Counted from the whole stretch's first letter, positions 27,982 through 54,155 are shown. The stretch: 63,784 nt of DNA, filler included, from Intoshia linei (GCA_001642005.1; 4 parts of 4 records of this genome joined end to end with filler, not necessarily neighbours in it); one strand, 5' to 3'. The notes: generated by a model from the letters alone, not told the origin. Translations and numbers: made by a program.

Positions 27982-30409
27982 NNNNNNNNNNNNNNNNNNN
28001 NNNNNNNNNNNNNNNNNNNNNNNNNTTAATTAATTAANNNNNNNNNNNNNNNNNNNNNNNNNNNNNNNNNNNNNNNNNNNNTTTACTCTTTAATTTATCT
28101 GTATTTATTTTATCTAAATTCATTCATAAATAGATGACGATCAACATTTAATAATACATATTATAATATTAATATACAAATTAATGAAATTCACGGTTTT
28201 TTTAAATTGAGGCATTCCGTTAATTAGTAAAAACGATTTAACCGATTTCATAACTATGAAATTTACTATTAGAAATATGATAATAATGTTCAATTATTCA
28301 AATTTTGAAGTGCTCAGCTCAGGCAATTATTGTATGCAAAATATAATTAATGCCTACAACACATTTTTGTTATATTTACCAGGGTTGTTCGGGTGCCCAA
28401 ATTTTATTCCAACATGTAGACCAAACAGCAGAAATTTATAGCAATGAAAATAATAAATGATTATTGATTAATAAATAAACAAAAAAATAATTGTAATTAT
28501 GAAGTGATAAATAAGTAATTTTAAAGTTTAATAGTTTTGAAATTTGACTGAATAACTACAATAACACAACCGTATGGTAAGTTTCCATGATAGAAAGTTT
28601 ATAATGTGGATCCGCATATTTAAATATATTTTTTTAAATTCTACAATAATTAAGTATTTAATATTACTTTTATTTGATAGAAAGTTATTACTTCCTTGTA
28701 CATCTAAAATATAGTTAGTAATAATGTGCATGGACTTGAATCAATTATAATTATTTTTTGTAATCAATTAATTAAAAAATATTTTTAATGTTAGATATGT
28801 TTGTATCATATATTATTTGTATCATATATATTATATATTTGAATTATAGTTTTTATTGAGAAATTGAGAAGTTTTAATAGATAATTGAGTATAAATGATT
28901 ATACTATTTGATAAGTGCAGGAGTATTAAATTACATTATGAAAAAATCAAAAAATATTAATACCGTCAGATTTGTGGATAGTGAACATTTAGTTCCGATT
29001 TTTTTTAATGTTCACTATAAAAAAATAATGAAAATGACAGTGAAATGAAACATTATTAATCATGAATCTTTTATTTATTTTCTATATAAGTCAAGTTACT
29101 ATAGTAATATCAGTTAAGTTCACTATTTGTTTACTATCTAAAGGGTTAACTATTAACAATTCTGACTGTAGTAGATTCTTTTAGTAAATTAAGTTCTGCT
29201 GTTTTCTTGCATTTAAAAAATAGTATCTTATATTGTAAAAACAGTAAACTAATTATTTAATGAAATATATAAAATTTGGCAAAATAATACAGAGTTGGAC
29301 TTTTCATTTTTTTGAACATGACATTACCTCTAATGCTCAAAAATTTAATAATCAATTATTTGGTAGTGAAGTAAATGAAAAATTTAAATTTTACGTGATA
29401 TTATTTATCTTAACACTACAGTTTGTAATATATATAATTCTATGTTAATTAACTATTAAACTAATTAACTGAGTTGTAAGATTATATTTTCGTATAATGG
29501 AAATGTTATAATAAACTAAAATACTAAAAATTCAATAAAAGTGAAGTTATAACATTTTCAACCAGATAATAATATATTGAATGCCACCAGAAAAGTAATT
29601 CGTATACTACTACAGAAGCTGTAGAAAATAACAATCTGAACTCAACTAACTGTCACTAACTGTAAATAATAATTTAATTAAAAATGTATTACTTGATTCA
29701 AAACTAAAAACCATTATAATAACCGCAAAAAGTTCTTTCTTCATTTCTATTTTTTATAATGTAAATATAAATAAAGTAATATACAAATAATACAAATAAA
29801 AAAATGTCATAACATTATAATAATTATTTTCGCATACCATGAAGTTAAATATACCAATATGTCAAAATTTCAATTCCAGAAATCTAAGCATTGCCGGTGA
29901 AAAATAATTTTTAATATATTATCAACTAATATTTTTCAAATACAGTGTGGCCTCTCAATACCGACAATTTTGGTATTTCAATATTTATAGGGGTATTGAG
30001 AGTATATCGTTATAGGAACATTATAGGAACATTTATTAAAAATAGCTGACGTCATTTAAGCTCTTGAAGACGATGTGTATGTTGCAAACCTATTGTGATT
30101 AAATTCTTTAAAACTATCGTGATTTCTTGAATTTTACTATAATTAGAGGTTGTAATTTATGAGATCTATTCATATTTGTACATAACAAAATGGATACTTT
30201 GTCTTATATAATTTTATGACCTTTATATAATTATAAATAGCATAAATTCCATAAAAAATAAAATTATAAAAACCTATTTTGTTATTTTCAGTGTGATGAT
30301 ATATGTTCAGTACCAAATTAGTAAATACTTAAAATTACTAATTATATATTAATAATTAACCGAATCTTCACTTTATAAACATATTTTAGTTGTATTTTAC
30401 CAAAATTTC

Positions 30410-31305
30410 AAAGGATTGTAATAAATATAAAAATGATATTAACAAAGTTGTTTTATTTTCGTTGTTTAGTTTCTATTGAAATTTTATTCAAAATGTTTAG
30501 TAAATGAGAATTTAAAATTTAAAAATTGCGTAGCAATGAAAATAATAAATCAATGAAATGCAAAAAAAAAAATCAGTATGAAAAGCAATGAAATGTGTGG
30601 ACGTACAATGCACATTTTTTTTGAAATTGTAGGATCAATATTTACATTTTAATTTTTATTTTAATCGAAATATTTGAAAAATCTGGTTGATAATATATTA
30701 AAAATTATTTTTCACCAGGAATGCGTAGATTTCTGGGGTTGAAATTTTGTATTTATATCAACTGGAATAAGCTCTATCAGAATAATTTTTTTTTAATTTT
30801 CGGACCGTTAATTATTTTACATTTTGTGTTTTAATAAAATATTTCGAAAAAAAAATATATAAATACTAAAATGCTTTTTTGACCGTGAAATCGTCATTTA
30901 ATCGGATTAAATTTTTTTGTGTGTTAACAGGATAAAACTGTAACACCAGTAAATTTTTTGAAATTCTAGGGCTGTTTTAATTAAAAAAAGAAGGGTAATT
31001 TGGGGTTTTGGCATACAAGATATAATTTTTTTAAATTTAAATTTATATAATGTTTATGATTTTACAATCCGTATCAACGTATATTTTATTTTAAATTCTC
31101 CAACGCGTTTGATTTTCAAAAAGAGGGACAAATGGGGTTTTTGACCCGTAAGATGTGAAATTGGGAGGTTGGAATTTATTTTATTAAACGTCCCGGAAAA
31201 AACTGTAATTGAAATGTGGACTTTATAAAACTCTAAGACTGGTAGTTATTTCAATAAAGTAGAACACACACACACAAACAAAAATCGCGTAGCATATTAT
31301 ATAAG
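30410..31305 (-). mobile_element. Helitron-like element, long copy upstream of 7TM gene 1
   Basis: Reverse complement of 32811-33557 and 62315-63270 over ~750 bp; ends in CACACACACAAAC...CATATTATATAAGT, the element's 5' end. Confidence 0.8.
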
Positions 31306-31771: not shown

Positions 31772-32671
31772 ATGTATTTTACTGTTTGGTATGTAATTTT
31801 GGCAATATCTTACACAATCTTAATTTTGCTAGCGATCTGTTTACTGTTTTTATTATATTTTTACAAAGGAAAAAGATCTATGGCATACTACATTGCTATT
31901 TATTCCATTTTAGTCATAGCCGGATGTTTCAGATTATGTCAACATGCAATGTATTTAGATAATCAAAGTAGTATAATTACGGAGTTGATATCTAAATATG
32001 TGGTACAATCATGCATATATTTATGTATAGGTATAGAATTTTATGGGTTCATTGGAGTAATATCAAAGAAACATGCCTGTTACAAGGTTTTATCTAAACC
32101 GGTTGCAATGGTTATTCTAGCGATAAACGTAACACTTAACTTAACATTAATTTTAATTTTATATTTTGGAAATTTGCCTATACATACCAATTATATAATA
32201 AAAATAGTTATACATTCTTTAAACTGTTGCTTCGGAATTATTACATGTTTAATAGGGATACAAATATTTTACCTATTTATTAAGCGCAAAAATCCTACAT
32301 ATGAAATTATTGATTCTACTTATTTGTCAGAAGTTCACTGCAGAAAAATTTCAATATCTATGCATTACATACAAAAATTGCCACGATTCAAGGATACTTT
32401 CAAAATCAATGTGGAAAACCGAATGAATGTGCCATTTTTTGTAAAAATCTTTTTCCTTCAATCTATCTTTATTTTGATTAATATTGGTTTTCAGTTCAGT
32501 TCCATTGCACAATTGATAAAGTTTCTCAAATCGATGACATTGGATGATAATCAATGTGTATACAATCATCTCTTGTTATATGGTGATGTCATTGAAATTA
32601 TTTTAGGATTCAGTATGATATCTCTTTCTTCTAATGCAATATATTTACGTCATAATGTGAACTTTTATTGA
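31772..32671 (+). CDS. Orphan 7-transmembrane receptor-like protein, paralog 1 (299 aa, intronless)
   Basis: Uninterrupted ORF with seven hydrophobic segments; shares KGKRSxxYY, IFYLFxKR, FxDTFxI and PFFVK with paralogs 2 and 3. Confidence 0.85.
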   Translation: MYFTVWYVILAISYTILILLAICLLFLLYFYKGKRSMAYYIAIYSILVIAGCFRLCQHAMYLDNQSSIITELISKYVVQSCIYLCIGIEFYGFIGVISKKHACYKVLSKPVAMVILAINVTLNLTLILILYFGNLPIHTNYIIKIVIHSLNCCFGIITCLIGIQIFYLFIKRKNPTYEIIDSTYLSEVHCRKISISMHYIQKLPRFKDTFKINVENRMNVPFFVKIFFLQSIFILINIGFQFSSIAQLIKFLKSMTLDDNQCVYNHLLLYGDVIEIILGFSMISLSSNAIYLRHNVNFY

Positions 32672-32810
32672 TGTTAAAAATAAACATTATTATGTAATTG
32701 ACATTATTTAACTGCCCATGTTGTAAATCAGGGTTCTGAAACTTTTTGTAGACATTTTATTAACCGCCCACTAGTAAAATTAAATATTTAGTTTTGTTCA
32801 GTTATTTTTA

Positions 32811-33557
32811 GTATATAATATGCTATGCAATATTTTTTTGTGTGTGTGGTAAAGTTTATTTTAATAACTACAAATCTTAAAATCTTATAAATTCCACATT
32901 CTTACAGTTTTTTTTGGGGTGTTAGAAAAATAAATTTTAACCTCCCAAACTCACATCTTACAAGTGAAAAAGCCCATTGTCCTTTTTTTGAAAATCAAAA
33001 CATATTCGAGAATTTAAAAAAATATATTCTCCGATACCGATTTTATAATCATAAATATTATCATAAATTTAAATTTCAAAATCTTCAGGGCCAAAACCAC
33101 AAATTTTTTTTTAATGAAAACAGCCCTATAATTTAAAAAAATTTACAGGTTCTACAGTTGTATCCTGTTAACACACACAGTAAATTTCAATCCGAATAAG
33201 TGACAACTTCACAGTCAAAAAAACATTTTAGTATTCATATATTTTTTTTCGAAATATTTTATTAAAATGAAAAATGAAATAATTAACGGTTCAAAAATTA
33301 AAAAAAGATTATTCTAATAGATATAAATACAAAATTTCAACACCAGAAAACTACGCATTCCCGATGAAAAATAATTTTTAATATATTATCAACCAATATT
33401 GTTCAAATATTTCGATTAAAATAAAAATGTAAATATTGATCATACAATTTCAAAAAAAATTTTTTTGAACGTCTACACATTTCCAATAAAGAAATATAGG
33501 TAAAAATCTATATAATTCATTACTTTGGAATTTTTTTCATTGCTACGCAATTTTTAT
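32811..33557 (+). mobile_element. Helitron-like element between 7TM genes 1 and 2
   Basis: TATATAATATGCTATGCAATAT...TGTGTGTG start, colinear with the 22827 and 62315 copies. Confidence 0.8.
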
Positions 33558-33655
33558 TAAGACATTGTTAGTACAAATATTAAAAATTTACCTTCAATAT
33601 GTAAAATATTTACTTTGCTGTTTTCTAAAAACATTTTTAAGGTCGATAAATTGAA

Positions 33656-34552
33656 ATGGATTTTCTGGCTGCTTACAATTACATATTTTTAATAATAACG
33701 ACTACAATATGTATATCATCAATTATATTCATGATTATGATAACAATGAAGGGTAAACGTTCGATAGCCTACTACGGTGTCATACACATAATGTTATTTT
33801 TAATGTCTGGAATTCGAGCTATAAACTATATTATGCATATAATAAACAAAGAAACGTTTACACTTAGTGTTATATCCAGTTGTTCTGCCACACCATTGCT
33901 TATAGTCGCTTCTATATCTCATTTATACGGTATAATTAAAATATTAAATTCAAAATATTATGTTCGAAGATTATTCAGCAATTCAGGAGCATTGATAATA
34001 GTATTGCTAAACTTATTAAACATTAGTACGGTTATTGTGATAATAACAAATACATCTGATGACACAGTTGCTATGGCCATGTTATTGATTTGCAATGTAA
34101 GTCAAATTATCTTAGGGTTTATTGTGTGTTTGCCGTGTGGATACATTTTCTACTTGTTTAGAAAACGTACAATTGAAAAATATGACATTTTGGATGCTGA
34201 TTACCTCACAAAGTTAGAAAAGGACGTTCAAACTAAAGCTCCGCTTAGTAGAATAATTTCTTTTATGGATACTTTCAAAATTGATGTGAAAAATGAAACA
34301 AAAATTCCATTCTTTGTAAAAGCCATATTTGTTCAATGTTTTATCATTTCATCATTTATAGTAGTTAGAATGGTATTTATTTATTACTTGATAATGTCTC
34401 TAAATCACGGAATAACCCATTATAGATCTATTATGCTTAATATAGTTCAATGCCGCAGTGTAATTGAAACTAGCTATGCCGCCTTACTGTTGTCTTTCTC
34501 AATACATTGTTTATATGCAAAAAGGAGAAGCGATAAAACAAGTAAAAGTTAA
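33656..34552 (+). CDS. Orphan 7-transmembrane receptor-like protein, paralog 2 (298 aa, intronless)
   Basis: KGKRSIAYY, SSCSATPLL, LYGIIKILNSKYYVRRLFSN, IFYLFRKR, SFMDTFKI, IPFFVKA; seven hydrophobic segments. Confidence 0.85.
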   Translation: MDFLAAYNYIFLIITTTICISSIIFMIMITMKGKRSIAYYGVIHIMLFLMSGIRAINYIMHIINKETFTLSVISSCSATPLLIVASISHLYGIIKILNSKYYVRRLFSNSGALIIVLLNLLNISTVIVIITNTSDDTVAMAMLLICNVSQIILGFIVCLPCGYIFYLFRKRTIEKYDILDADYLTKLEKDVQTKAPLSRIISFMDTFKIDVKNETKIPFFVKAIFVQCFIISSFIVVRMVFIYYLIMSLNHGITHYRSIMLNIVQCRSVIETSYAALLLSFSIHCLYAKRRSDKTSKS

Positions 34553-34879
34553 ATAATAAATAAATAAATTAATAAATTCTCTTTTTTAAATAATATAAAA
34601 TAATTGACGATGGTTATACTGAGTAGCCGATATTAATATTCATCAAACGGAATAATACATATGTAAGATATAAAAAATGATGGATAATTTATTTATTGGT
34701 TACCTAATTTATTTCTCATATTAGAAATGAATGATTAAACTATTAACCTAAGCAAAGAAAAATTTGAGGATATTTTAAATATATTCAAGTTATTAACATA
34801 TCCTCTCTAAGAATAATGTTTTATAATTGTATTTAAAATTTTTAATTATGCGGGCGTCAAGAGGTTGAATTAAATTGTA

Positions 34880-35431
34880 GTGTTGGGATGTAAAAAAATA
34901 CATTTTATGTTAGACAAGTACAACCATCCTTGCGACGATTTGAAATCTTCAATTTTTAAATTTGAAGAAATTTTCAGAGCATAAGATTGTATCATTGGAC
35001 CGGAAACTGGAACATTATATTTTCTTAGTAGTTCCAACATGTTCATAACTCCTGTTTCAACTATTAGCCTTTGATATGATCAATCTGTATTTTAAAAAAT
35101 TTTTTGTATTGTTGTTTTGGATACATTATACAATTCAGCCAACTTTCTTTGAGATGAGTTTTTTTTTAATAGGATTTTGACAATTTCATTTTTTTTATCA
35201 GTTGTTAATTGTGTTATCAATTGACATCACGTGTAATTTAGTTTATACAAATTTAAATTTATTAACAATTGTAAATGTGTAACCATTGACATGTTTTAAT
35301 TTATATTTTTGGTCAGTTTTCCAAAGAGAAATTTATTTATATTAGTATGAATTTGTTATATTGTCTTAAAAAGTGGTCACTTTTGAGAGGTGGTCACCCG
35401 TTCGAAGTTGTCACTGTTCGAATTTCTACTG
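34880..35431 (-). mobile_element. pogo/Tigger transposon relic (CENP-B-type HTH)
   Basis: Minus strand reads SQRKLAELYNVSKTTIQKILK...LRKYNVPVSGPMIQSYALKISSNLKIEDFKSSQGWL; terminus TA|CAGTAGAAATTCG at 35431. Confidence 0.8.
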
Positions 35432-35488
35432 TACTAATGTTCTTTTTAGATTTATATTAAAACAGTTACAATTATGTACATTGTACAT

Positions 35489-36617
35489 TAGGGTGTTAAC
35501 TTTTTGACCGAATTTTAGAAATTAAAAAAATACAGGCCATACGGTATGAGAAATGCAATAAAAATAACATCTGGGGTGTTTGTTTTTAATAGTATTACAA
35601 AAATATCGGCCTGCTCTGCAATTTAAAAATACCCATAATATTTTGAACTGACTTTTATTATTATTATATTATTTTTTATGATTATTATTAAGTTCAAGTC
35701 GATTAACGGTGTCATTATCTAATTCACCGTCAATGCATGTAACCGATCTAATTTATGTAGGCATTTGAAAGTATTTATGGTACTGTCGTTACTTCACCCC
35801 GTAAAGAATCTGAGAAATAGTATAAATAATTTTGTTTAATAGAAGTGGAAAGGTTTCTTTTTAAAAGTAAATTCTATAATAGAACACCTAACTGAAAAAT
35901 TGTACATATGATGAAATAAACTTTTTTAAATGTATCATTATGATACAACTTACAACCATACAACTTGAATGGGTCCAACAGTTACGAATTTGGCTTCCTT
36001 AAAATTTCATCAACCTTATCTCCGTGTTATATAATTTCTGTGAGATTTTATATACGGATTACAGTTTTGTCAAAAATGTTGCTTCTCAAAGATATCTACA
36101 TGATGCTAACCTATACTTCTATCAACCTCTATTTACGTATTTATTGACGATTCCTTTTATTTTACAGATAGAATATGGAAGAAATGAAACATTGCAATCT
36201 GATTAGAATCAAAATAATTATTATTTTTCATTGAGCTGAATTTCATTATGTGATTTATGTTAATTATATTACGTTTATATTATTTTGACACAAAAAAAAT
36301 TTAGCAATTACTTATGAAATTTTGAATATAAAATAGAGAGAAAAAAATATTTTTTTGTAATTAATTAGACCCATTTTAATTTTTTCGCAGGCAGGTAAGA
36401 TTGTTGTCAATAGAAATAACAAATTTTAATAAATAATATAAACATAATGGCAAGGTTACGCACAATGTTATAAATCTTATTTATGAAAACTATTTCCATT
36501 GAGCAGGCCGATGTTTTTTAAAATTTAGGCTTAAAGAATGATACAACCGTTCTTAGAATTTTTTTCTCATCGTGTATAACCCTGTATTTTTGTTATTAGA
36601 AAAAAGTTAACACCCTA
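35489..36617. mobile_element. Non-autonomous hAT (hATm-like, TAGGGTG ends) element with long imperfect TIRs
   Basis: TAGGGTGTTAACTTTTT / AAAAAGTTAACACCCTA, with further inverted blocks (ATCGGCCTGCTC / GAGCAGGCCGAT); TSD TTGTACAT / TTATACAT (7/8). Confidence 0.85.
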
Positions 36618-37227
36618 TTATACATATACGTTATTATTATACATATTACATGTTAAAATCATGTATGTAGCATTCTGGCAAATTTTACTTGCTTTATATA
36701 TTTAGAGTAAATATATTAATTTTGACTTCCAAGTTGGCACTGTTTCATTTTTTCACATTATGGAATTGTTTAATTTCAATAATTTCATAATTAAGATCAA
36801 ATTTCTCTCATCATTCACTCTTAATGGTACAATTTATTGGTTTATAAAAGTGTTTCACAACTTTGTTTTAACGAAATCAACATTCCACGAATTTTTACTT
36901 CTTCACACTAATAAAACTGGAAATATTTATAATAAATTTATTAAAATTTGTAAATATCTTACCAACGATATCAACAGTTTTGAAGTCTGTACTCGAATCG
37001 AGTCGGTTCCAATCTTAATTTTAAGAACAAGTAAAAATTGTTTATAAAAACACTCCTAAAATTTAAATTTAAAACTAAAATTAACATTATATTAAATCTT
37101 AACTTAAACATAAATAATAAATATTTAAATATATTCATAAAAGACCAAATAAAAATAATTAGTATAATTATAATACATGTATTTAATAAATTACAATTAT
37201 GTATTAATACATAATAGTTTTATAAAT

Positions 37228-37720
37228 TCGTTGCTGTAGTGTTATAATTTAATTAAAGTTTATACAAAATGTTTTGAAAATGAAAAAAAATCCGAAGGAA
37301 TAAATTATATAGATTTTCATCCATATTTCTTTATTGCAAATGAGTAGACGTTCAATGCACATTTTTTTTGAAATTGTAGGATCAATATTTACATTTTCAA
37401 TTTTTATTTTAATCGAAATATTTGAATAATATTAGTTAATAATATATTAAAAATTATTTTTCACCGGGAATGCGTAGATTTATGGGATTGAAATTTTGTA
37501 TTTATATCAACTGGAATAAGCTTTATCAGAATAATTTTTTTTATAATTTTCGGACCGTTAATTATTAACAGGATACAATTGTACCACCTGTAAATTTTTT
37601 GAAATTCTAGGGCTGTTTTCATGAAAAAAAAAATATAATTTGGGTTTTGTCTTTGAATATATATTTTGTTTATATTTAAATTTATGATAATATTTATAAT
37701 TTTAAAATCCGTATAAAGGA
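37228..37720 (-). mobile_element. Helitron-like element, internally deleted copy
   Basis: Shares GAAATTGTAGGATCAATATTTACATTT and CCGGGAATGCGTAGATTT blocks with other copies. Confidence 0.75.
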
Positions 37721-39225
37721 AATATCAAAAAAAGGAAAGTGGAAAAATATTTAATAAAAACTTTGTTTGAAGTTACCCCAACAGAAAGATCTTTCAATGT
37801 ATAAAATCATAATGATGAATTCTTTTTTTTTATAGTTAAAGCCCATAAACTTTCTTTTTGAGTGTCATTGGCAACTCTCAAAAACCCTAGTACATTATTT
37901 TTTAAAATCATTCAACCCCTTTAAATTTTTTTTATTTTCTAGAGCCGGGTACACAACGTACGGTCGCATGCGGCCTAATAGCGTTTATTTGCGGCCGTGG
38001 GTAATCCATCTGATCATAATGTATATGATTTTAATTCAAATTGAAAAGTTGAAAACTCAGATTTTATTCAAGGACTATTCAATTTTTATATTAAAAAGTT
38101 ACATTTTTGACTTTAGCCATTTTCTCAAAATGGATTTAAACTTTCTCAGTGTCAAATAAAATTTAAAATTTTTTATAAAAATTATAACAAAATAATCTTA
38201 AGTGCTAATAATTCACTTTAAATTTATTTTTGATATTTAAATTTAACTCTACAAAAATGTTTATTTTTTATTTATTTATTTGATAATTATAAATTATTCA
38301 TTATATAAATTATATTATATTATATATTATTATATAAATTATAAATATAAATAAAGTTATTTGTAATATTATTTATTTTTAACGATTATGGTGATTTTAT
38401 TCTAATATACATGAATTTAATTTAATGCATCTCGACATTATTCAAGATAATTCGACATAATGCAATTCATCTTACTAATAACGACATAATTATGTTACAT
38501 CAGATTTTATCCAATATGTTCATTTTACTAATTTAAATTTATTTATATTATGAAATTTTACATTATAAACTCATTTCTTTTGGGGCACCTTAAAACAAAG
38601 ATTTTATATAAATTTGTTTGCATTATACTGATTTCTATATCAATTTAATCATTTTATATACTAAATTTCGTGAAAAATCTGAAATTTTTGAATATGTGAA
38701 ACACCGTAAAGGTCACTGTGATTTTTTTTGACAAAAATTAAAAATATTCATATATCCGCATCAAATTAAATGGAAAAAATATCTATAAATTTTTTTCTAT
38801 ATTTTTAAAAAAACTACAGAATGGAATAACTATAATACATACGTTATTTTCGCTTTACATTTAATGTCAAATAATTTAAAATTTTTTGTATGTATTTTTT
38901 ATGGTCACACGTTCTTAAAATTTTTGGAAATGTGAACCACGAAATAATTAAACTTGTCACCATTTTTTTTTTCTTGAAAAATAAATAGTATGTACCAATA
39001 ATTTTAATAATCAAAATAAATACAATAATTTACATTACATGACATTAATAATTATTATGACTTTCTAATAATTTTAAATTAGAAATATAATCAATAATTC
39101 GATTAATTTTTAAGTTTATACAAACCTACATACATATATTCATCTTATTTTCATTTATACTATTATAATAATATATAATTATACATTACTTTATTATACT
39201 TTCTAAAATATATAATAAGCGAAAC

Positions 39226-40125
39226 ATGCTTACATCGTTTTTGAATTGGATATATTTAGTTTTAAATCTAATTCAAGCAATTATGGCTGTAATTTTATTT
39301 GTATTTCTCATATACTGGAAAGGAAAAAGATCCATAGTGTATTATTTTGTGATACACTTCATGATACTTGTTATGTCAATAATACGATTCAGCGGTAATG
39401 TCGTATATTTGATTGGTAAAGATAGTTTAAAGATGAAAGTATTTTCCTCATGTTCTGGGGCACCACTATTACTGACTGCCATAGTAATTCAACTTTACGG
39501 AATAAATAAAATTCTTACTTCTAAGTATGTTGTAAGAAAAATATTTAGTAATCCAGTGGCATTAATTGTCATATTACTGAATATTATCAACACTTCAACA
39601 GTTATATTATTTATAGTATCTGTCAATATAAGTTTCAATTTGCTTTTGACTATGTTAATGGTATGCTGTATTATTCAAGCATGTATTGGAATTTTTACAT
39701 GCATTCCATGTGCACATATATTCTATCTTTTTAGAAAAAGGTCCTTGGAACAATTGGATATCATTGATCCAAATTATTCTTTATTGTCTGATGAACATAG
39801 AGATAATAAGAAGCGCACTGTCATTAAAAGATTGTCGTCGTTTATGGACACATTTCACATCAATATTTCAAATAAAACTCGTATTCCATATTTTATAAAA
39901 GCTCTATTAATTGAATGTCTTTTGATCATTATGTTAGTTTGTATGAAAATTGGAGGTGTCATTTTTATCGTTAAATGTTTATGGAACTCCAAGATCAATT
40001 ATGATGAAGCATTTAATTATTCTTTTTTTTTGTACGGAATAGAAAATATACTTGGTTTTCATCTGCTGACATATTGCATAAATGCTCTGTATACAAAATA
40101 TAAAAGTAGTAAAAATAGAAAATAA
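39226..40125 (+). CDS. Orphan 7-transmembrane receptor-like protein, paralog 3 (299 aa, intronless)
   Basis: KGKRSIVYY, SSCSGAPLL, LYGINKILTSKYVVRKIFSN, IFYLFRKR, SFMDTFHI, IPYFIKA; seven hydrophobic segments. Confidence 0.85.
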   Translation: MLTSFLNWIYLVLNLIQAIMAVILFVFLIYWKGKRSIVYYFVIHFMILVMSIIRFSGNVVYLIGKDSLKMKVFSSCSGAPLLLTAIVIQLYGINKILTSKYVVRKIFSNPVALIVILLNIINTSTVILFIVSVNISFNLLLTMLMVCCIIQACIGIFTCIPCAHIFYLFRKRSLEQLDIIDPNYSLLSDEHRDNKKRTVIKRLSSFMDTFHINISNKTRIPYFIKALLIECLLIIMLVCMKIGGVIFIVKCLWNSKINYDEAFNYSFFLYGIENILGFHLLTYCINALYTKYKSSKNRK

Positions 40126-40947: not shown

Positions 40948-43900
40948 TTATTTTCTCATGACAACAATTATAATACAAAAAAATCCACTTAAGGATAGTA
41001 TTAGAAAGGATAGATTGATATCAAATGGAAATATATAATCATTTGTTATGGACCATGCATATATATTTCCTAATAAAAACGGTCCGAGTGATCTAAGAAA
41101 CAATACATTTCATAATACATTTAAAATAATCTAAATACAGTAAAACCTCACTTAACAAAACTCCCACATTATAACAAATTAAAATACATAGAATTAAATA
41201 GAAAAATGTCTGAAACTTAATTTCATAAATAGCCAGTGCAAGAAGAAGAAACTGCTCTTTATTTTGCATATTTATAATATTTTTATATTGCGTAAATGTA
41301 AATTAGAATCTCGCTTAACCAATTCCAGCTTAACGAACAAGAATTTGGAACGAAGTGGATCGTTAAAGTGAGGTATTACTGTAATCATTAAATATTATCA
41401 TTGATTAATCATCATTATACAACTTTTTATTGTTGCGGCGCACCCAATATGGAAAAAAATATTAACACTTCAAATCATTTTAATTTTAAATTTTTTGTTT
41501 TAAAATAGTTTGATTATAATTAAAATAAAAAATACTAAAATGTACTAAAATGGTTTTTTTACCGTGAAGGCTTCACTTTTTCAAATTGAAATTCTTTGGG
41601 TGTATTCACTGGATATAACTGTATCAAAAATATATTTTTTTTTAAATTCTAGGACTATTTTAATTTTTTTAAAAAAGGGCAATTTGTGGTTTTGGTTCTG
41701 AAAATGCACTTTTTTAGGAGTGCCATTTATTATTATGTTTATCATTTTAAACACTATCCAATAATTTATGTTTTATTAAATTTTTGGGCTGATTTATTTT
41801 TTTAACAAAAGAAAAAATTGGGTTTTTGAGACTGAAGAACTTAAATTCGGAAACTGAATTAGAAATTTAGATTTTTTTAAATTTTGGGACTGTTAATATT
41901 TCCAATATACTGTAAAAAACACATAGACAGACACACAGACATTCCATTTTATATAAGTAAACTTTACTTAGTAAAGGATAATTGAGGATACCGTTTAACT
42001 ATTATATAACTATTAAACGTTTAATAAGATTGGTCAACACTCAAAAATATAACTAGAAAAAAATTATATCTCTAGGATCATCAAAGAATTCCATGAACAA
42101 ACGTGAAAGTAAGGTGAAACAGTGTTACTCTTATAAATTACTAATGCTACAAAATTTATAATAAATAGAATAGGTTAATTATTATATTGTATTATATTAT
42201 ATTGAGAATGATTGATTTTATAAAAGTTGAAAAATTTTGTATTATTTGTGAAGTTTACTGGATGAACCCAAAAAGAAGCTAAAAATTAAATATCCAAAAA
42301 GTGTAGCGATATCTATGAGTCATTTTATGGCAAAATACCACGATGAGCATGGGTTCCTACCAAATGTTGCTAATGTTTTTACATAATGCTCATGAAACAC
42401 ATTTTGAACAAGGATATAACGCAAAAAATTAATAGGTCTCATCAAATGTGTGGTGCACGAAAAACACCAATCTGTCATGATTAAAATTTTTTATTGATAT
42501 CTTGTAATTTCGATTTCAAAAAAATAGTTCTCTAAAGTTTATTTATAAAAAATATCGATCGAACTATGATATAATTTAATATATACCACAATCAGCACTT
42601 TTCAATGTATATACTCTATATAAAAATATCTACTTTATTTTAGAAAAACAAATATTTATAAAAAAACGCTGCACTTCTGCCCTAATTTTTAAAATTTTAC
42701 TGATTTTTTCTTTATAGTGTCTTGAAACTAAGTATCCAATACACACCTGTTAAAAAAAATTTGAGCAAAATTATTGGAAAGGGTCAAAATTAGTTATAAG
42801 ATTAAAGTGAAAATAACTTTACTATAAATCAGGGGTGTCAATTATGCGGCCCCAAATTATGAAATGTGCGGGCCCGCGTTATAATATAAATTTTTATTTT
42901 CATTAACAATTTTTTACACATATTTCTTATATTTCAGTATTTTTCATATATTTTTTATGATTTATTTATTCATTATTACATTTTTTACACTTATTCCATT
43001 TATATTGTTTCATATTTCAGCAAATTGAGTCTGACACCCCTGCTATTAATATAGTAAAATGTGCTACTTTATAACTCTTATATTCAACTCATTTAACAAT
43101 ATTCATTATATTTAAAAATTAAAACGATTCAGATAGAATAAAAAGTGTCACCGTTATCGCAATACCGTGAACTACACAATAAAATATAAATGGTTCTATT
43201 TAATTGAAATATTTCAAAAAATGTTGGACTGTGTAATTAAACGATATTAACGATAAACAAAATTACTATTTTTCATTAACAAAATTATTATTAAAAACAA
43301 AAATAAATAAGGTAGAAGTTAATTTAAAAATACAAAGTGAATAACCAAACATTGCGATCAACACAAGACTACTCAAACCATAACCATAGTATCTTATCAT
43401 AAAATTAGAGTATTATAATAAGTAATATAATAATATTATTATAATATTATATAATAGTAATATTATAGTAAATAAAGTTATATTTCAATTTTCGTATATT
43501 ATTTTATGGTATCTTTTAATTAACAAGCTGTTCCATAAATTTTTATCTAATTTAATTATTTTTTTCATTGCAACTATACGCGACTTTATTCGTTGATGAC
43601 AATACAATTGAAAAAAAAAGTGTTAAATATCACATTCCTACTGGAAACTGTTCATTTTACCCCTCATCACCGGTCACACTACCGTATAAACTATATTAAT
43701 ATTTACCTTATAAAGCAGCACGTTCCATAAGCAATTCCATTAACTTTTCCAACTTTACTTACATCCACAGAATTATTGATTATTAAAGTGATAAATAGGA
43801 ATATAAAGGTCTTTCCAATATTATTTATGGTAATAAGTGAAACTACCGATATAACTAATACAATTGGCCTAAATCATGTAAAAAATTAAGTACAAATAAC

Positions 43901-46900
43901 TCGGTACATCATTTACATATGTCAGGTCCCACCAGCTTGAAAATGCGAAATAACGTAGCATTGATATACATATTAATAAATACATGTATATTGCATTGAA
44001 TGTGTATAACTCAACTGTATATATTATATGGATAATACATTTAATTATTGTTAAAAAAGAGAATATGTATACAATTAATTATGTTCTATATGAAGATCCT
44101 AGAATATGAACTCATTTTAATATGAACATGACAGTTTTGTTTGAACAAACATTGATTTGACATTTCGAAACTTTTAATTATAATATTATTATCGCCATTC
44201 ATATATGTTCATATTACAGTATAATATGAACATGATCAAAACCTGGTCCCTTCATGTTTATATACAACAGAACTGACTGTATTACACTTACAAAAACTAG
44301 TTTTTAAGAGAGTTTATGCTATTTACTGATTTACTACACTCATTTTTTAATTAAAATTTAATTTTTTGAAAATATTTATTAATTAAAAAATTAATTAATT
44401 AATTTTATTTGTAAAAATGGACGTTTTGATAAAATAAATTTTAAAATAAAATAATTATATATTTTGCATTAAACTTAATCATTTGTATTAAAATTCAATT
44501 TAGACTTTAATTATTTTAGGTTGCCATTATACGTTATAATAGCTTTATCTACCTTTTGTATATTTTTGAATTCTCTATCTCGCCAACTTTTTCTAAATTT
44601 CAAGAATGGCGAGTTATAGAGAGAATACTGTATACATTTAAATATAAAAAATACATTTTTATGAACATTCGTAGATTCGGAATTAATGTTGTTGTACAAA
44701 TTGTTATGCAGCAACTGATACAATATAACTAAAAATTCACGATTATATATTATGACTAGGTTGACTGTTATGTCTACGTACAAACAGAACCTAGCTCTGC
44801 CGAAGGCACATTTTTATTCTACCAAAAAAATACATTCACGTTGAAAATCTAATTCATTTACTTTTAGTAATCGTTGTTGTAGTTTTAATTTAGATTTTAT
44901 ACAAAATAATTTAAAAATATAAAATTTGAGATTTAAAAATTGTGTACCAATGAAAAAAAATCCGAAGGAACGAATTACATAGATTTTCACCCATATTTCT
45001 TTATTGGAAAGGTGTAGACTTTCAATACACAGTTTTTTTGAAATTGTAGGATTAATTTACATTTTCAATTTTTATTTTAATCGAAATATTTGAAAAATAT
45101 TGTTGATAATATATTAACAATTATTTTTCATCGGTAATGCGTAGATTTCTGGGGTTCAAATTTTGTATTTATATGAACTGGAATAATATCTATCAAAATA
45201 ATTATTTTTTTTAATTTTCGGAATTTAATTATTTTACATTTTTTGTTTTAATAAAATATTTCGGAAAAAAATATATGAATACTAAAATGTTTTTTTGACC
45301 GTAAAGTCATCACTTATTTGTCACATCACTTTTCATCACAATTTAAAAAAATTACAAAAGTAATATCGATTTTATAAAGCAATCTAGTCGAAACTAATAT
45401 CAATATTATTGGCGGTAAAAAATATGTTGCAGATAAATATTTTGATATTTCACGAGTGTCCAAATGCAGTCCACCTATATATATAATATATATACTTGTA
45501 TATATAAATTAGAAATAGGTAGAATTAAAGATACCTAATGTGTAAATATTTTGAAATAAAATTTTACTAGTACTAGTAATAAAAAAAATGTTGATATAAC
45601 TGAAAATTTTGTTTGCAAGTGCAAAATTTCTTAAAAAATATTAATATTAATATTAACAGTAGATCATATATTAATACCTTGGTATACTGAAGTTGACAGC
45701 CATGAAAACAGAATTGAATCCTGTGGGATGATAGCAAATGATATGAAACAATATGAAGCTATTGAACATATAATGTTGCGAGTACTAAACAGTTGATTGT
45801 ATTATAATAATTATATAATAATAATTATTATATTTTATTTTAATCAATGTTTAAAATAATCTAAGACAGAAACTTACACCATTTAAAAATAAATTTTAAA
45901 AAAAGTAATGTTAAATATAATGGAATACAATTAAATCACAAATCAAAAATAGCCTTTCGGCTCAGTATCATATAATAAGACATGAAAATCCCCGAAATCT
46001 AACCATTACGGAGTTTCGTATTAGACATGTAGACCAAATAATTGACAGTAGTTTGAATAAAATCTATCTATTTAAAAATAAAATTACAATTTTACAATCT
46101 ATGCATTTTGTAAATTATATTTAAAAACATTTTGCCAGTGTTCTACAATTAAATGATCTTGAGGTTGGAAATTAATTTTTTATGTAAATACATTTTTATT
46201 ATCTTAAAGTAACAATTATCCTTAAATGCACATTAAAATGTCATTCCTTTTAGTTTTTCAGTATATTTATTTCTTATGTATAATGTCTTGATTAATATCG
46301 TATTTTTAGAATAAAAGTTTGTTTTGAAATCAACTTTACTTTTTTTGAAATTAACCTTTAAATAGTGTAGACTAAGTGTTTATTCTTAAGATTTTATGAT
46401 TAATAACTGATTCTGATTAAGGTTAATCACTGGTAAAGAATAAAAAAAATACCAATAATTGTTATAAAGTTTTGTGCATATTTGTTTCAACGATTTTGTA
46501 TTTTTATTTATTACTTTTATATCTTTAATTGATCTAAACAATTCAATATTCATAAATACATAAGACCAGTCATTAAACAGACCCACATGGATGATAACAC
46601 TGTACAACATTTTTCGAAAATTTTCAAAATAGCAGCAAAAAATTTATTTTATTGTAAAGACCGCATTGTCAGGATTCGAACATTATATCTGATTATGTAT
46701 GATCTGATTGTAATTATTAGATAGTCTCTAATTAAAAAGTATACATAAGATAATTTATATAATATATAGAATACAGTTATGTTCTATCTAAACTAAATTG
46801 AATTTTTTAACTGATGAAAAATAATGGAAAAATCGAGAAAAAAAATTTGACCGTATTTAATAGATCTATATATTTGTAATGTGAGTTTTTTAATTTAAGT

Positions 46901-49566
46901 ATAAATCAATTAATAAAGATTTTAATGATCAGAAAAATATATTTTTAAGTTTCTGTTATTGATTTCAAAATGCACGAGATAAAATGATTTGATTGATAAT
47001 ATAGTAATTCATTACTAATAGGTAAGTTAGTTTCACGCCAAAATATCATAACCTTAAAAAAATGAACTCTTCGACACTATGTGAGAAGTTGGCTCTAAAC
47101 ATGACCTGTTTTTTGAAATAAAAATTGGTATTTTATGAAAATAGCAAAACTTTTATACATATATTATATTTACCTGAAAAAGAAGTTACCATTGTATCAA
47201 GCAGTTTATAATGTTCTGGTCTTAATTTTTCATTTTCTCAGTTTAAAAAAAAGTTTTATTATGAAAATATATAAAAATTTTATTATAATACAAATACGTA
47301 AATAAATTAAATATGACAATGTGGTGTTTTATATGAACCACACATAATCCTTTATCAATAATATTATTTTCTTTCCAGCAAATCTGTCCTCAAATTATTT
47401 CAGTGTTTGATGAAACCGTTCACTATGCTGATCGGAGTGTATTTTGCAATTAAATGTAGATTTCACACTCTTGTCAGTCACACCTCAAGACTTTGTTTTT
47501 CACTGATTGTGTTCGATGCTTTGCTAATACATATTATATCATTCAAATCTTTCATTCCTGGTACTATTTTATTATCATTAAAACTAGGATCCTAGGAATC
47601 ATAATTGCTAGTATCGATACCAGATGATAACCTTCTGGGTACATTTTCTAATTGGAATATATTTTGTACTAGATATTTGGAGGAAATAATATCTGGTATA
47701 CTTGGCAATTGTTAAATTTGTTATACATATATAACATATATATTCTTATGTATATAATTAATATCAAAATTTTGTTTAATACTATACTATTTATAAGAGT
47801 AATTTCATGCAACATTTTGAAGGGAAATTAACTTCTCTAGAACTAAATCTTAAAAGCGACTAAAATTTAAACGATTAAACATATATCATATATAGACATA
47901 TATAATTTTTAGCACATTTTAACTACATAGTATATAGATTTTATTTTGCTATTTTTTTAGTGTTGTACAGTGTAATTAATTAAAGTTATATTTTAATATT
48001 ATATTAATGAACAATTATAATATGTATATTAGAGTGATTAACAAATTGGAATCTGAAATTGAAATAAAATCAACCTTTGATAATCTAATATTAATCAATA
48101 CAGTTATTGTTAGCATTATAACATATTATATTTTATTAACACCATTATTAATATTTTTTATTAAATTACTTTTTTGGCTTATGCTTTGGCATCATCAGAA
48201 AAGACATGATAATAGCTAATATGCAGAGAAAAGAACAAAACATACCGGGAAGTGAATATGGATAATTTTTAAAAAATACGTATTTTTCTGGGTCCATATT
48301 ATAATATTTAAGTGGATTCGTTATGTATCCTAAATATATGTTAGATACATTTAAAAAATACAACATATGACATATGTATACAATATTATTATTATAATTG
48401 ATATAATGTATATGCCAATTTTGCTTATTTACCAGTTATAGATGAACTCAATACTAAACCTATCGCCATTCCAACGGTGAATGCAGTTGCATAAAAACTT
48501 TCGTTTTCCGGTGACGAATAAAGTCTAATTGCCGATTTTGAAATAATCACTGAACCTAAATTTTAATATTTATTTATATTACTTAATTTTTATTCTAATG
48601 TTAATTAGTTAATCCAGCTCATAAAATCAAATCGACTGTTATTTAACAGTTTATTTAAAAAATTAATGTCACATCAATTTAAAAAACAGTAATTATGGTT
48701 TATGTTTATTTGTGGCGACAATACTACAACTTTTAATTTGAGCACGTTGCATTACCACGATCAATGAAATGACTATTTTGTTGCCCATATTTTTAAAAAT
48801 ATTTCATCAAAATAGTAATTGTTTTTACAGTTTGTAAAAATAGTTGTACAATATTTTTTTAAATGATTTATATATAAAAAAATGAAATACAAATTTAAGT
48901 AAAATTTTAATACACTTGTATTTAATTTCTTAATTTGGTAGAATTAAATAATTTGCCATCAGCAGAGCTATATATTGTTTGTACAAAGTATATAACATCC
49001 CAGCTAATAATTAATGATTATTACCCGAAGATAATCCTAATAGCATCTTAAAAAGAACAAGATAATATATACTTCCACCAAATCCATAAAAAAATGTGCA
49101 TAATCCTGTTAATAGAAATGTAATCATCAAAAGCAATCTTGTATTGAATTTATCAAATAAATAGCCCCATATCACACTAAATAAGCATATTAAAAAAAGT
49201 AAATTATTATTAAATTAATTTTGAAATTAAATTAAAGATAACCTTGATACGCCTTGTGCTACGTAATATGATGAATTTATTAATCCCATATATTTGGCAA
49301 TTACATCTTCATTTCTTAAAATGCTCTATAATGTTAATTTTCAGGATAAATATTTTTTAGAAACATACAATGATTTGTTCTGGCATAAATAACTGATTGT
49401 AGAAATTTGAATATATGAAAATTAACTAAAACCGAAATTTAAAATATTCAAAAATAATTATTTATTTTACGGAATTGACTGTTAAGCATATATAAAGCTT
49501 AAAATCTACTTCAATGTCAGTGTTCGACAAAACGATTCTTTTTATAGATTTACACAGTAATTTCAT
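40948..49566 (-). CDS. MFS transporter, ZIFL (zinc-induced facilitator-like)/DHA1 type, full-length multi-exon gene
   Basis: Exons give EDVIAKYMGLINSSYY, VIWGYLFDKF, KMLLGLSSGSVIISKS, GYITNPLKYY...FKNYPYSLP, TRNIICSIASYCF...FSWLSTSVYQGGLHL, LIINNSVDVSKVGKVNGIAYG and RSLGPFLLGNIYAWS...FPFDINLSF...RK*. Central loop exons are uncertain. Confidence 0.82.
41138..41381. mobile_element. pogo/Tigger-type MITE
   Basis: TA|CAGTAAAACCTCACTTAAC ... GTTAAAGTGAGGTATTACTG|TA. Confidence 0.85.
41500..41958 (-). mobile_element. Helitron-like element, diverged 5' portion
   Basis: Ends ACACATAGACAGACACACAGACATTCCATTTTATATAAGTAA, the element's 5' end with microsatellite. Confidence 0.7.
42830..43042. mobile_element. 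hAT MITE
   Basis: TIRs CAGGGGTGTCA / TGACACCCCTG; TSD CTATAAAT / CTATTAAT (7/8). Confidence 0.88.
44756..45320 (-). mobile_element. Helitron-like element with intact 3' terminus
   Basis: Minus strand ends TGCCTTCGGCA-GAG-CTAG-GTTCTGTTTGTACGTAGACATAACAG-TCAAC-CTAG|T (hairpin plus CTAG); interior colinear with other copies. Confidence 0.8.
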
Positions 49567-53700: not shown

Positions 53701-53754
53701 AAAATTACAATAGAAAAACAATCATATACAACATACTAAACTGATAATACCATA

Positions 53755-54155
53755 CCCGGGTTTTCTTCATATTGAACACATACTACCAGTTCCTCAACAA
53801 TATTATTGGACCAATCTTTACATCTACGACCGTCAAAGTGAAGACTTAATTTTTTGGTAGATATATAATTTTTTAATTGATTAAAATGTCTCATAAACAG
53901 GTTGCGTTTTTTTCTCCATATTGAGGACGTTAATATTCCACAATATCCAAATACATCATCTCATATTCCCTGACAGGTTCTGTAGGACAATTTGAATTTG
54001 GTACATAGGTTTGATGATAAAGTTTTAATATATATTTCACTCAATTCACCATTAATTATTCTAAAAACGAATACTTTTATACTTTTTTCAAACATAATAT
54101 TTTTCGAAGAACATCTTTTCTTGAGGGTATTTTATTTAGGTTCAAATCATAATCA
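53755..54155 (-). pseudogene. Degraded DNA-transposase fragment (hATm-like) next to an assembly gap
   Basis: Minus-strand frames PSRKDVLRKILCL and TSSIWRKK...KLSLHFDGRRCKDW...EELVVCV; LHFDG(K/R) is typical of this transposase group. Confidence 0.55.

What the first reader, a model, noticed from the sequence alone, without database searches (positions are those of the whole stretch)
31772..40125. Cluster of three intronless orphan 7TM receptor-like genes: candidate undescribed chemoreceptor family
Three same-strand ORFs of 299, 298 and 299 aa each have seven hydrophobic helices and almost no N-terminus. Basic loops after TM1 (KGKRS), TM3 (SK...RK/YK), TM5 (KR) and at the C-tail imply N-out GPCR-like topology by the positive-inside rule. 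They lack DRY, CWxP, NPxxY and a retinal Lys, and do not show the inverted insect Gr/Or topology. They are intronless while every conserved neighbour is intron-rich, highly diverged from each other, yet intact and length-conserved. This is the pattern of a lineage-specific, tandemly expanding chemosensory family, for example for host or mate finding. I cannot assign them to a named family from sequence.
Basis: partly seen in the sequence, partly recalled or inferred. Interest (0 to 1): 0.85.

Follow-up and report, generated by a model that had tools for sequence, protein, structure and literature searches.

The report
Orthonectid-only family of cryptic GPCR-fold genes
Three neighbouring intronless genes of the parasite Intoshia linei encode very divergent seven-helix proteins with the shape of G-protein-coupled receptors, from a small family seen only in this species; a sensory role is plausible but untested.

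Summary
Three same-strand ORFs of 299, 298 and 299 aa are the only long ORFs in the 26-kb piece. Chance expects about 3e-8 such ORFs. They are paralogues (25-39% identity).

Each has seven hydrophobic helices. K+R counts are 18-21 on the predicted inner side against 2-5 outside, giving N-out/C-in topology.

The piece is a contig of the orthonectid Intoshia linei. A profile search of 1.84 billion representative proteins found relatives only there: five further loci on other contigs. No Pfam or PDB sequence match exists.

DRY, CWxP and NPxxY are absent. Cytoplasmic loops are conserved and extracellular loops are not.

Best reading: a lineage-restricted, highly derived rhodopsin-like orphan GPCR family. 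The closest analogue is flatworm PROF1. A chemosensory role is only inferred; expression could not be tested. A language-model resemblance to the GPR137/TOM1 group remains a rival.

The GenBank models of all three genes are truncated or mis-spliced.

The parts
31772..32671 (+). g1: intronless gene for a 299-aa 7TM GPCR-fold protein, the most divergent of the three. The GenBank model (P0003, 263 aa) starts at internal Met37 and so lacks TM1.
33656..34552 (+). g2: intronless gene for a 298-aa 7TM GPCR-fold protein. The GenBank model OAF68256.1 (P0002, 293 aa) starts at Met26 and carries an artefactual extra 3' exon.
   Evidence: ORF. Seven hydrophobic segments. Source names, including 'GPCR family 1 profile domain-containing protein'. 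The tail of the annotated model maps to 34919-34981, antisense to a transposase remnant.
39226..40125 (+). g3: intronless gene for a 299-aa 7TM GPCR-fold protein. The GenBank model (P0001, 250 aa) starts at Met50 and so lacks TM1 and part of TM2.
39838..39903 (+). Most conserved block of the family, shown here in g3 (residues 205-226, SFMDTFHINISNKTRIPYFIKA). It covers the end of intracellular loop 3 and the cytoplasmic start of TM6. D208, F210, P221 and F223 are invariant in all 8 members.
   Evidence: Alignment A2. Region-wise identity.

Best explanation
The three ORFs are functional paralogues of a small family restricted, as far as public protein data show, to the orthonectid Intoshia linei. 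There are at least 8 loci. Each encodes a minimal protein of about 299 aa with seven TM helices and almost no N-terminus. The N-terminus faces outside and the C-terminus faces inside, and the helix bundle packs as in G-protein-coupled receptors, most like class A (rhodopsin-like).

I read them as highly derived rhodopsin-like orphan GPCRs. They have lost the canonical DRY, CWxP and NPxxY motifs. Only possible remnants stay at equivalent places: S-K-Y at the cytoplasmic end of TM3, IFYLFRKR at the end of TM5, and N-x-L-Y followed by basic residues at the end of TM7.

Inferred mechanism:
1. A ligand is bound on the variable extracellular side or in the pocket.
2. The signal passes through the bundle. 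Family-conserved polar residues lie there: Arg54 in TM2 and Glu275 in TM7.
3. It reaches a conserved cytoplasmic face made of KGKRS in ICL1, the TM5 end, and the SFMDTF...IPFF(I/V)KA block entering TM6.
4. That face engages one common intracellular transducer, most likely a heterotrimeric G protein.

Shown here: gene integrity, paralogy, topology, fold, the conservation pattern and the taxonomic restriction. Inferred: receptor function, G-protein coupling and any sensory role such as host or mate finding by the free-swimming stage.
For: - Integrity and paralogy.
- Organism and family: one search found only 8 true hits among 1.84 billion representatives, and one search shows the five hits from outside the window are named I. 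linei proteins. The contig length of 26,075 bp equals the piece.
- Topology: seven hydrophobic segments. K+R inside 18-21 against outside 2-5. An N-glycosylation sequon lies in the predicted TM4-TM5 outer loop in 4 of 5 sequences.
- Foldseek: the top 50 are all GPCRs for the g3 model, and GPCRs plus a few xenorhodopsin chains for the g1 model.
- Source annotation: UniRef names g2 a 'GPCR family 1 profile domain-containing protein'.
- Receptor-like conservation: intracellular loops are 33-78% identical, extracellular loops 10-17%. pN is 0.41 against pS 0.71 overall, but pN is about equal to pS in the outer loops.
- Precedent: the flatworm PROF1 family is intronless, N-out, rhodopsin-like with only motif remnants, has no BLAST homologues and is mostly missed by gene models (PMC3261222).
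Against: - No sequence-level link to any GPCR family: no Pfam hit at E up to 10 for any of the 8 members, and no PDB sequence hit at E up to 10.
- Foldseek E-values (0.006-0.03) miss the tool's 0.001 line.
- The models rest on only 3 and 8 sequences (pLDDT 71-73). AlphaFold may pack any 7-helix protein in a GPCR-like way.
- The hallmark class A motifs are absent.
- The motif 'remnants' were placed by eye from helix ends, not from a residue-level structural alignment.
- A protein language model places g2 and g3 nearest to THH1/TOM1/GPR137 clusters.
Confidence: 0.6

Rival explanations
1. They are divergent, expanded members of the ancient THH1/TOM1/TOM3-GPR137 group. These are 7TM-only, GPCR-like proteins of lysosome or vacuole membranes that regulate processes such as mTORC1 recruitment. 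They are not surface sensory receptors.
For: - Language-model feature search: for g3 the best named cluster carries PF06454 (score 0.90) and another carries GPR137_N.
- For g2, 15 of 30 named hits are THH1/TOM1/TOM3 clusters (0.91, 173 shared features), plus GPR137_N. Nine of the ten best hits with a family share a family or clan.
- The architecture is the same: a 7TM domain only, no extra domains (PMC12716839).
Against: - hmmscan finds neither PF06454 nor PF27607 in any of the 8 members, even at E up to 10.
- The exhaustive profile search found no such proteins at E up to 0.001.
- Atlas scores of 0.89-0.93 are in the range the tool says shuffled proteins reach 4-10% of the time.
- GPR137 is described as broadly conserved across eukaryotes. 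This family is multi-copy (8 or more) and fast-diverging, with variable outer loops.
- No solved GPR137 or TOM1 structure appeared for comparison, so the fold test cannot separate the two readings.
Confidence: 0.17
2. They are 7TM membrane proteins of some other function (transporter, channel subunit, scaffold) that merely share the common seven-helix up-down bundle.
For: - No sequence homology to any receptor.
- Weak single-member Pfam hits to ABC_membrane_3 (E = 1e-4) and the sterol-sensing domain (E = 0.013).
Against: - The stray Pfam hits each occur in only 1 of 8 members.
- No SWEET/PQ-loop, PAQR or insect Or/Gr (7tm_6/7tm_7) Pfam hit.
- N-out topology contradicts the N-in insect Or/Gr and PAQR families.
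Confidence: 0.15
3. They are untranscribed or decaying ORFs, for example relics carried by mobile elements. g1 is bracketed by an inverted pair of a roughly 700-bp interspersed repeat.
For: - No expression evidence was obtained.
- Repeat copies lie at 30590-31303 (+) and 32812-33483 (-), flanking g1.
- A Tc5 transposase remnant lies between g2 and g3.
Against: - Three 299-codon frames stay open at a stop frequency of 0.09 per codon, although synonymous sites are saturated.
- Length is conserved at 298-299 aa, also in P0004 on another contig.
- pN is well below pS in the TM and inner regions.
- The same repeat also occurs where there is no receptor gene (41.5 kb, 44.9 kb), so it is simply dispersed.
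Confidence: 0.04
4. They are microbial-type (retinal-binding) rhodopsins.
Against: - No Lys in TM7 for a retinal Schiff base.
- No Bac_rhodopsin Pfam hit.
- Microbial rhodopsins drop out of the top 50 for the better g3 model.
Confidence: 0.01

Closest known systems
[quoted passage not shown] 2011, PMC3261222)
   Same: - Intronless genes.
- 7TM with an extracellular N-terminus.
- Restricted to one spiralian parasite-rich lineage and multi-copy.
- No significant BLAST homology to other GPCRs.
- Only remnants of rhodopsin motifs.
- Mostly missing or wrong in automated gene models; here all three GenBank models are truncated or mis-spliced.
- Ligands unknown.
   Different: - PROF1 keeps recognisable remnants (TM2 [LI][AS]..[DE], D[RK][CM] at TM3/IL2, [NS][FG]..[YF] in TM7) and a few members pass a rhodopsin HMM.
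- The Intoshia family has S-K-Y, no acidic TM2 residue and N-x-L-Y, and no member hits Pfam 7tm_1.
- PROF1 transcription was confirmed by RT-PCR. Here it is untested.
Class A (rhodopsin-like) GPCRs, Pfam PF00001 / PROSITE PS50262
   Same: - Seven helices, N-out/C-in, with short loops.
- A Tyr plus a basic cluster at the TM5 end, and a Tyr plus a basic stretch after TM7.
- UniRef labels one member with the family 1 profile.
   Different: - No 7tm_1 HMM match.
- DRY, CWxP and NPxxY are absent, and there is no TM4 or TM6 Trp.
- The N-terminus is extremely short (about 7 aa) and the C-tail is about 9 aa.
- A conserved 50-aa ICL3 carries the family's strongest motif.
THH1/TOM1/TOM3 and GPR137 7TM proteins (PF06454, PF27607)
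   Same: A 7TM-only protein with no other domains. Nearest named neighbours in the language-model feature search.
   Different: - No HMM match.
- GPR137 is broadly conserved and lysosomal, whereas this family is multi-copy and fast-evolving.
- Localisation of the Intoshia proteins is unknown.
Nematode serpentine chemoreceptor families (Pfam 7TM_GPCR_Sr*) and insect Or/Gr (7tm_6, 7tm_7)
   Same: Lineage-specific, clustered and rapidly diverging 7TM gene families of about 300-400 aa.
   Different: - No Pfam match to any of them.
- Insect Or/Gr have the inverted N-in topology and a different fold. Here the topology is N-out, and no Or/Gr structure is among the top 50 structural matches.

Membership tests
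Class A rhodopsin-like GPCR (PF00001 / PS50262) | Seven TM helices, extracellular N-terminus, cytoplasmic C-terminus | tested here: met
   Seven hydrophobic segments. Seven helices in two AF2 models. K+R 18-21 inside against 2-5 outside. This is prediction only, not experiment.
Class A rhodopsin-like GPCR (PF00001 / PS50262) | Significant match to the 7tm_1 profile HMM | tested here: not met
   No PF00001 hit at E up to 10 for any of the 8 members. No PDB GPCR sequence hit with the family profile at E up to 10.
Class A rhodopsin-like GPCR (PF00001 / PS50262) | Match to the PROSITE family 1 profile PS50262 | tested here: inconclusive
   The profile could not be run here. UniRef's name for the g2 model (A0A177B200) is 'G-protein coupled receptors family 1 profile domain-containing protein'. 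The other named members are only 'Uncharacterized protein'.
Class A rhodopsin-like GPCR (PF00001 / PS50262) | Signature motifs E/DRY (TM3), CWxP (TM6) and NPxxY (TM7) | tested here: not met
   A regex search finds none in any member. Possible remnants are S-K-Y, IFYLFRKR and N-x-L-Y.
Class A rhodopsin-like GPCR (PF00001 / PS50262) | GPCR 7TM fold | tested here: met
Class A rhodopsin-like GPCR (PF00001 / PS50262) | Ligand-dependent coupling to heterotrimeric G proteins | not testable with these tools
   Needs heterologous expression and signalling assays.
THH1/TOM1/TOM3-GPR137 (PF06454, PF27607) | Match to the family HMMs | tested here: not met
   No hit at E up to 10 in any of the 8 members.
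THH1/TOM1/TOM3-GPR137 (PF06454, PF27607) | Overall resemblance in learned sequence features or structure | tested here: inconclusive
   Atlas feature scores are 0.89-0.91 with 160-173 shared features, and 15 of 30 named hits for g2. The tool rates such scores as leads only. No solved structure of the family appeared for comparison, and no library of predicted cellular structures was on hand.
PROF1 (flatworm rhodopsin-like orphan family) | Intronless, N-out 7TM, no BLAST homologues, rhodopsin-motif remnants D[RK][CM] / [NS][FG]..[YF] | tested here: inconclusive
   The intronless structure, topology and orphan status are met. The motif remnants differ: S-K-Y and N-x-L-Y (against Table 3 quoted). 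Sequence homology was not tested because no PROF1 sequences were on hand.
Microbial (type I) rhodopsin | Retinal-binding Lys in TM7 | tested here: not met
   No Lys within TM7 of any member.
Insect Or/Gr 7TM ion channels | Inverted topology (N-in) and a 7tm_6/7tm_7 HMM match | tested here: not met
   The positive-inside count gives N-out. No Pfam hit. Absent from the top structural matches.
Nematode serpentine chemoreceptors (Pfam Sr* families) | HMM match to any 7TM_GPCR_Sr* model | tested here: not met
   No hit at E up to 10.

The most novel reading that the evidence does not exclude
The genes belong to an orthonectid-specific chemosensory GPCR family, invisible to standard GPCR HMMs. The free-swimming ciliated stage, which has only a handful of neurons (my own background knowledge, not checked here), would use it to find nemertean hosts or mates. 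The family would signal through one conserved ICL3/TM6 interface. It would add a quarter or more to the 32 rhodopsin-family genes reported for this genome.
Probability: 0.25. Interest if true: 0.65.

Novelty: new variant of a known kind. Interest (0 to 1): 0.48.

Why it matters
Intoshia linei is one of the most reduced bilaterians. Published counts give it 32 PF00001 genes (PMC6543705) or 56 curated GPCRs (PMC5620054).

This family has at least 8 genes with a GPCR fold that Pfam does not detect and whose GenBank models are truncated. Receptor inventories of such fast-evolving parasites may therefore be undercounts. The family also supplies concrete candidates for how the short-lived free stage senses host or mate.

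It is also a second spiralian case, after flatworm PROF1, of an intronless, motif-eroded, lineage-private rhodopsin-like family. That makes it useful for asking how far a GPCR can drift and still signal.

Practical result: corrected gene models for three loci.

Tried and rejected
- **Pfam** on the three proteins and on all 8 members at E up to 10: only scattered single-member noise.
- **PDB sequence search** with the family profile at E up to 10: nothing.
- **Word-indexed protein search**, with the single protein and with the 8-sequence profile: only self hits.
- **Exhaustive profile search:** the one non-Intoshia hit, P0009 (E = 3.5e-4), is a low-complexity repeat protein and was rejected.
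- **Further copies or pseudogenes inside the piece** by tblastn: none.
- **dN/dS:** synonymous sites are saturated (pS about 0.7), so only pN against pS is reported.
- **Shared promoter motif** in the 150 bp upstream of each gene: nothing beyond AT-rich resemblance.
- **Expression:**
  - The look-up of sequencing runs listed six holders, none on record as RNA.
They were masked in the repeat script, and the Rfam and tRNA ranges stop beside them.
Full report
**What is there**

The piece (28082-54156, 26,075 bp, 23.5% GC) holds exactly three long ORFs, all on the + strand:
- g1 at 31772-32671 (299 aa)
- g2 at 33656-34552 (298 aa)
- g3 at 39226-40125 (299 aa)

Every other stop-free stretch in the six frames is 113 aa or less. 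With this base composition a codon is a stop with probability 0.09. A 299-codon open frame therefore has P = 6.5e-13, and about 3e-8 are expected in the piece.

The three are paralogues. tblastn gives E = 2e-63 for g2 against g3 and 1e-19 to 6e-33 for g1 against the others. No further copies or fragments lie in the piece. Alignment identity is 37% (g2-g3) and 25-27% (g1 against the others).

**Source and family**

An exhaustive profile search with the three sequences was run against 1.84 billion representative proteins. It found nine hits:
- Three are the database's own models of g1-g3.
- Five are other proteins: P0004 (299 aa, full length) and P0005-P0008 (fragments of 93-196 aa).
- One is a low-complexity repeat protein, which I reject.

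The exact look-up names P0002 and the five other-contig proteins as hypothetical proteins of Intoshia linei, an orthonectid. P0001 and P0003 carry no name or accession. The g2 model is OAF68256.1 / A3Q56_03998 and sits on a contig of 26,075 bp, which is the length of this piece. The five others lie on five different contigs.

The family therefore has at least 8 loci in I. linei and no detectable relative elsewhere in the protein collections searched.

In the tree, g1 is by far the longest branch. P0004 and P0005 pair with support of 100/99. By pairwise identity, the nearest relative of g3 is P0006 on another contig (50% over 122 residues). Synonymous sites between the three window genes are saturated (pS 0.68-0.72). 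These are old duplicates, partly dispersed, not a fresh tandem burst.

**Gene models**

The deposited models start at internal methionines: residue 50 of g3, residue 37 of g1 and residue 26 of g2. They therefore lack TM1 and, for g3, part of TM2.

The g2 model also replaces the natural stop by a splice to 34919-34981. That stretch lies antisense to a Tc5-type transposase remnant.

The full ORFs are the better models, for three reasons:
- All four full-length members (g1-g3 and P0004) are 298-299 aa.
- They share a hydrophobic first segment followed by (K/N)GKRS.
- All members except g1 that reach the C-terminus end in a short basic tail right after TM7.

**Topology**

Hydropathy gives seven hydrophobic segments in each protein. 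Two AlphaFold2 models each give seven long helices, and both have a disordered 45-50 residue loop between helices 5 and 6:
- The g1 model used the 3-sequence alignment (pLDDT 71.0, pTM 0.71).
- The g3 model used the 8-sequence alignment (pLDDT 72.8, pTM 0.71).

K+R counts are 18-21 on ICL1, ICL2, ICL3 and the C-tail, against 2-5 on the N-terminus and ECL1-3. The positive-inside rule thus gives N-out/C-in.

An N-glycosylation sequon sits in the predicted TM4-TM5 outer loop in 4 of 5 sequences. Sequons are common in this N-rich proteome, so this is weak support.

**Fold**

The Foldseek top 50 are all GPCRs for the g3 model, and GPCRs plus a few xenorhodopsin chains for the g1 model (probability 0.9-1.0, TM 0.4-0.6). 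The best E-values are only 0.029 and 0.0058, which is above the tool's 0.001 line.

The GPCR-type seven-helix arrangement is therefore well supported. The class is only suggested. The models come from shallow alignments, and AlphaFold may favour this packing for any 7-helix protein.

**Sequence-level assignment fails**

- No Pfam family matches at E up to 10 in a consistent way across the 8 members.
- No PDB chain matches the family profile at E up to 10.
- DRY, CWxP and NPxxY are absent, and there is no Lys in TM7.
- The only sequence-based pointer to class A is the UniRef name of the g2 model, 'G-protein coupled receptors family 1 profile domain-containing protein'. I could not reproduce that match here.

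Family-conserved features are:
- (K/N)GKRS..YY at ICL1 and TM2
- an invariant Arg54 in TM2
- YG..KI..SKY..R at the TM3 end and ICL2
- a TM5 end reading IFYLFRKR
- EIIDPxYL and SFMDTFKIN..NK..IPFF(I/V)KA in ICL3 and the TM6 start (D208, F210, P221 and F223 are invariant in all 8)
- an invariant Glu275 in TM7
- S-x-N-x-L-Y-x-K-x-K at the TM7 end

By position relative to the helix ends, S-K-Y, the TM5 Tyr and N-x-L-Y sit where class A receptors have DRY, Y5.58 and NPxxY. This is my inference, not an alignment result.

Four of five sequences have a Cys at the top of TM3 together with a Cys at the top of TM5. g1 lacks both. This is compatible with the usual TM3-ECL2 disulphide, but it is untested.

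**Conservation pattern**

Mean pairwise identity is 0.78 in ICL1, 0.39-0.44 in ICL2 and 0.33-0.37 in ICL3. It is 0.10-0.17 in ECL1-3 and 0.25-0.39 in the TM helices.

Nonsynonymous divergence is well below the saturated synonymous divergence overall (pN 0.41 against pS 0.71 for g2-g3). The two are about equal in the outer loops (0.57 against 0.60), where the alignment is also least reliable.

A conserved cytoplasmic face with a free-running extracellular face is what one expects of paralogous receptors. Such receptors bind different ligands but use one transducer.

**Rival: the GPR137/TOM1 group**

The language-model feature search puts g3 and especially g2 nearest to THH1/TOM1/TOM3 and GPR137_N clusters. 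Scores are 0.89-0.93, and 15 of 30 named hits for g2 are of this kind.

These are ancient 7TM-only GPCR-like proteins of lysosome or vacuole membranes (PMC12716839).

Against this reading:
- There is no HMM match.
- The scores are in the range the tool calls leads only.
- The family's copy number and divergence are unlike a conserved housekeeping protein.

No solved structure of that group appeared in the lists, and no library of predicted cellular structures was on hand, so I could not test it structurally. I keep it at about 17%.

**Neighbourhood**

- g1 and g2 are 1 kb apart. g2 and g3 are 4.7 kb apart.
- That 4.7-kb gap holds a Tc5 transposase HTH remnant (34873-35079, minus strand; PF03221, E = 5e-8).
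- A dispersed repeat of about 700 bp has copies at 30590-31303 (+), 32812-33483 (-), 37279-37717, 41509-41782 and 44871-45318. An inverted pair of these brackets g1 at 80.7% identity.
- Downstream, on the minus strand, lie two tandem multi-exon MFS transporter paralogues, at about 40951-49214 and at 51866 to the edge of the piece. Evidence: MFS_1 on one exon, E = 7e-6; exon-by-exon identity of 51-72% between the copies; one exon of copy B is split by an intron in copy A.
- No Rfam family or tRNA is present.

**Comparison with what is known**

The closest described analogue is PROF1 of flatworms. It is intronless, N-out and rhodopsin-like with only motif remnants. It has no BLAST homologues and was largely absent from gene predictions (PMC3261222).

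Published inventories credit I. linei with 32 PF00001 genes (PMC6543705) or 56 curated GPCRs (PMC5620054).
- No paper in the library mentions these accessions or orthonectid chemoreceptors.
- The held supplements of the 56-GPCR study do not list the accessions.

**What could not be done**

- The runs that hold g3 are of unstated or DNA type.
- I therefore could not read the other family loci, complete the fragmentary members, or count unannotated copies.

**Verdict**

These are real, intact, intronless paralogues of an Intoshia-restricted family with a GPCR fold. They are most likely highly derived rhodopsin-like orphan receptors (0.6).

A chemosensory role is a reasonable but untested guess (about 0.25). 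This is a new variant of a known kind and is moderately interesting.

Noticed in passing
window 30590-31303 (+), 32812-33483 (-), 37279-37717, 41509-41782, 44871-45318: A dispersed repeat of about 700 bp (70-94% identity between copies). An inverted pair at 80.7% identity over 719 bp brackets g1. An 80-bp core at 29863-29942 recurs at 90-92.5% identity. The element type is unknown (MITE- or SINE-like?).
   Followed up: partly
window 34873-35079 (-) and 34919-34981 (+): A remnant of a Tc5/pogo-type transposase DNA-binding domain (PF03221, E = 5e-8). The GenBank model of g2 (OAF68256.1) uses the antisense of this remnant as a spurious terminal exon.
   Followed up: yes
window 40951-49214 (-) and 51866-54156 (-): Two tandem, multi-exon MFS transporter paralogues. 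Exons are 51-72% identical between the copies. One exon of the second copy (53351-53635) is split by an intron in the first (45673-45792 / 45353-45475). The exons were not joined.
   Followed up: partly
window 31772-32671, 33656-34552, 39226-40125: The deposited protein models for all three genes start at internal Met residues (37, 26 and 50) and so lose TM1. The short family members P0005-P0008 on other contigs may be truncated in the same way.
   Followed up: partly
They were left out of all later searches.
   Followed up: no
window 39226-40125 (runs X2, X4, X5): Three 2024 runs of unstated library type hold 72-91% of g3's sampled words. One of them carries a different organism label (organism B). 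Whether any is RNA, or a host sample carrying the parasite, could not be checked.
   Followed up: no
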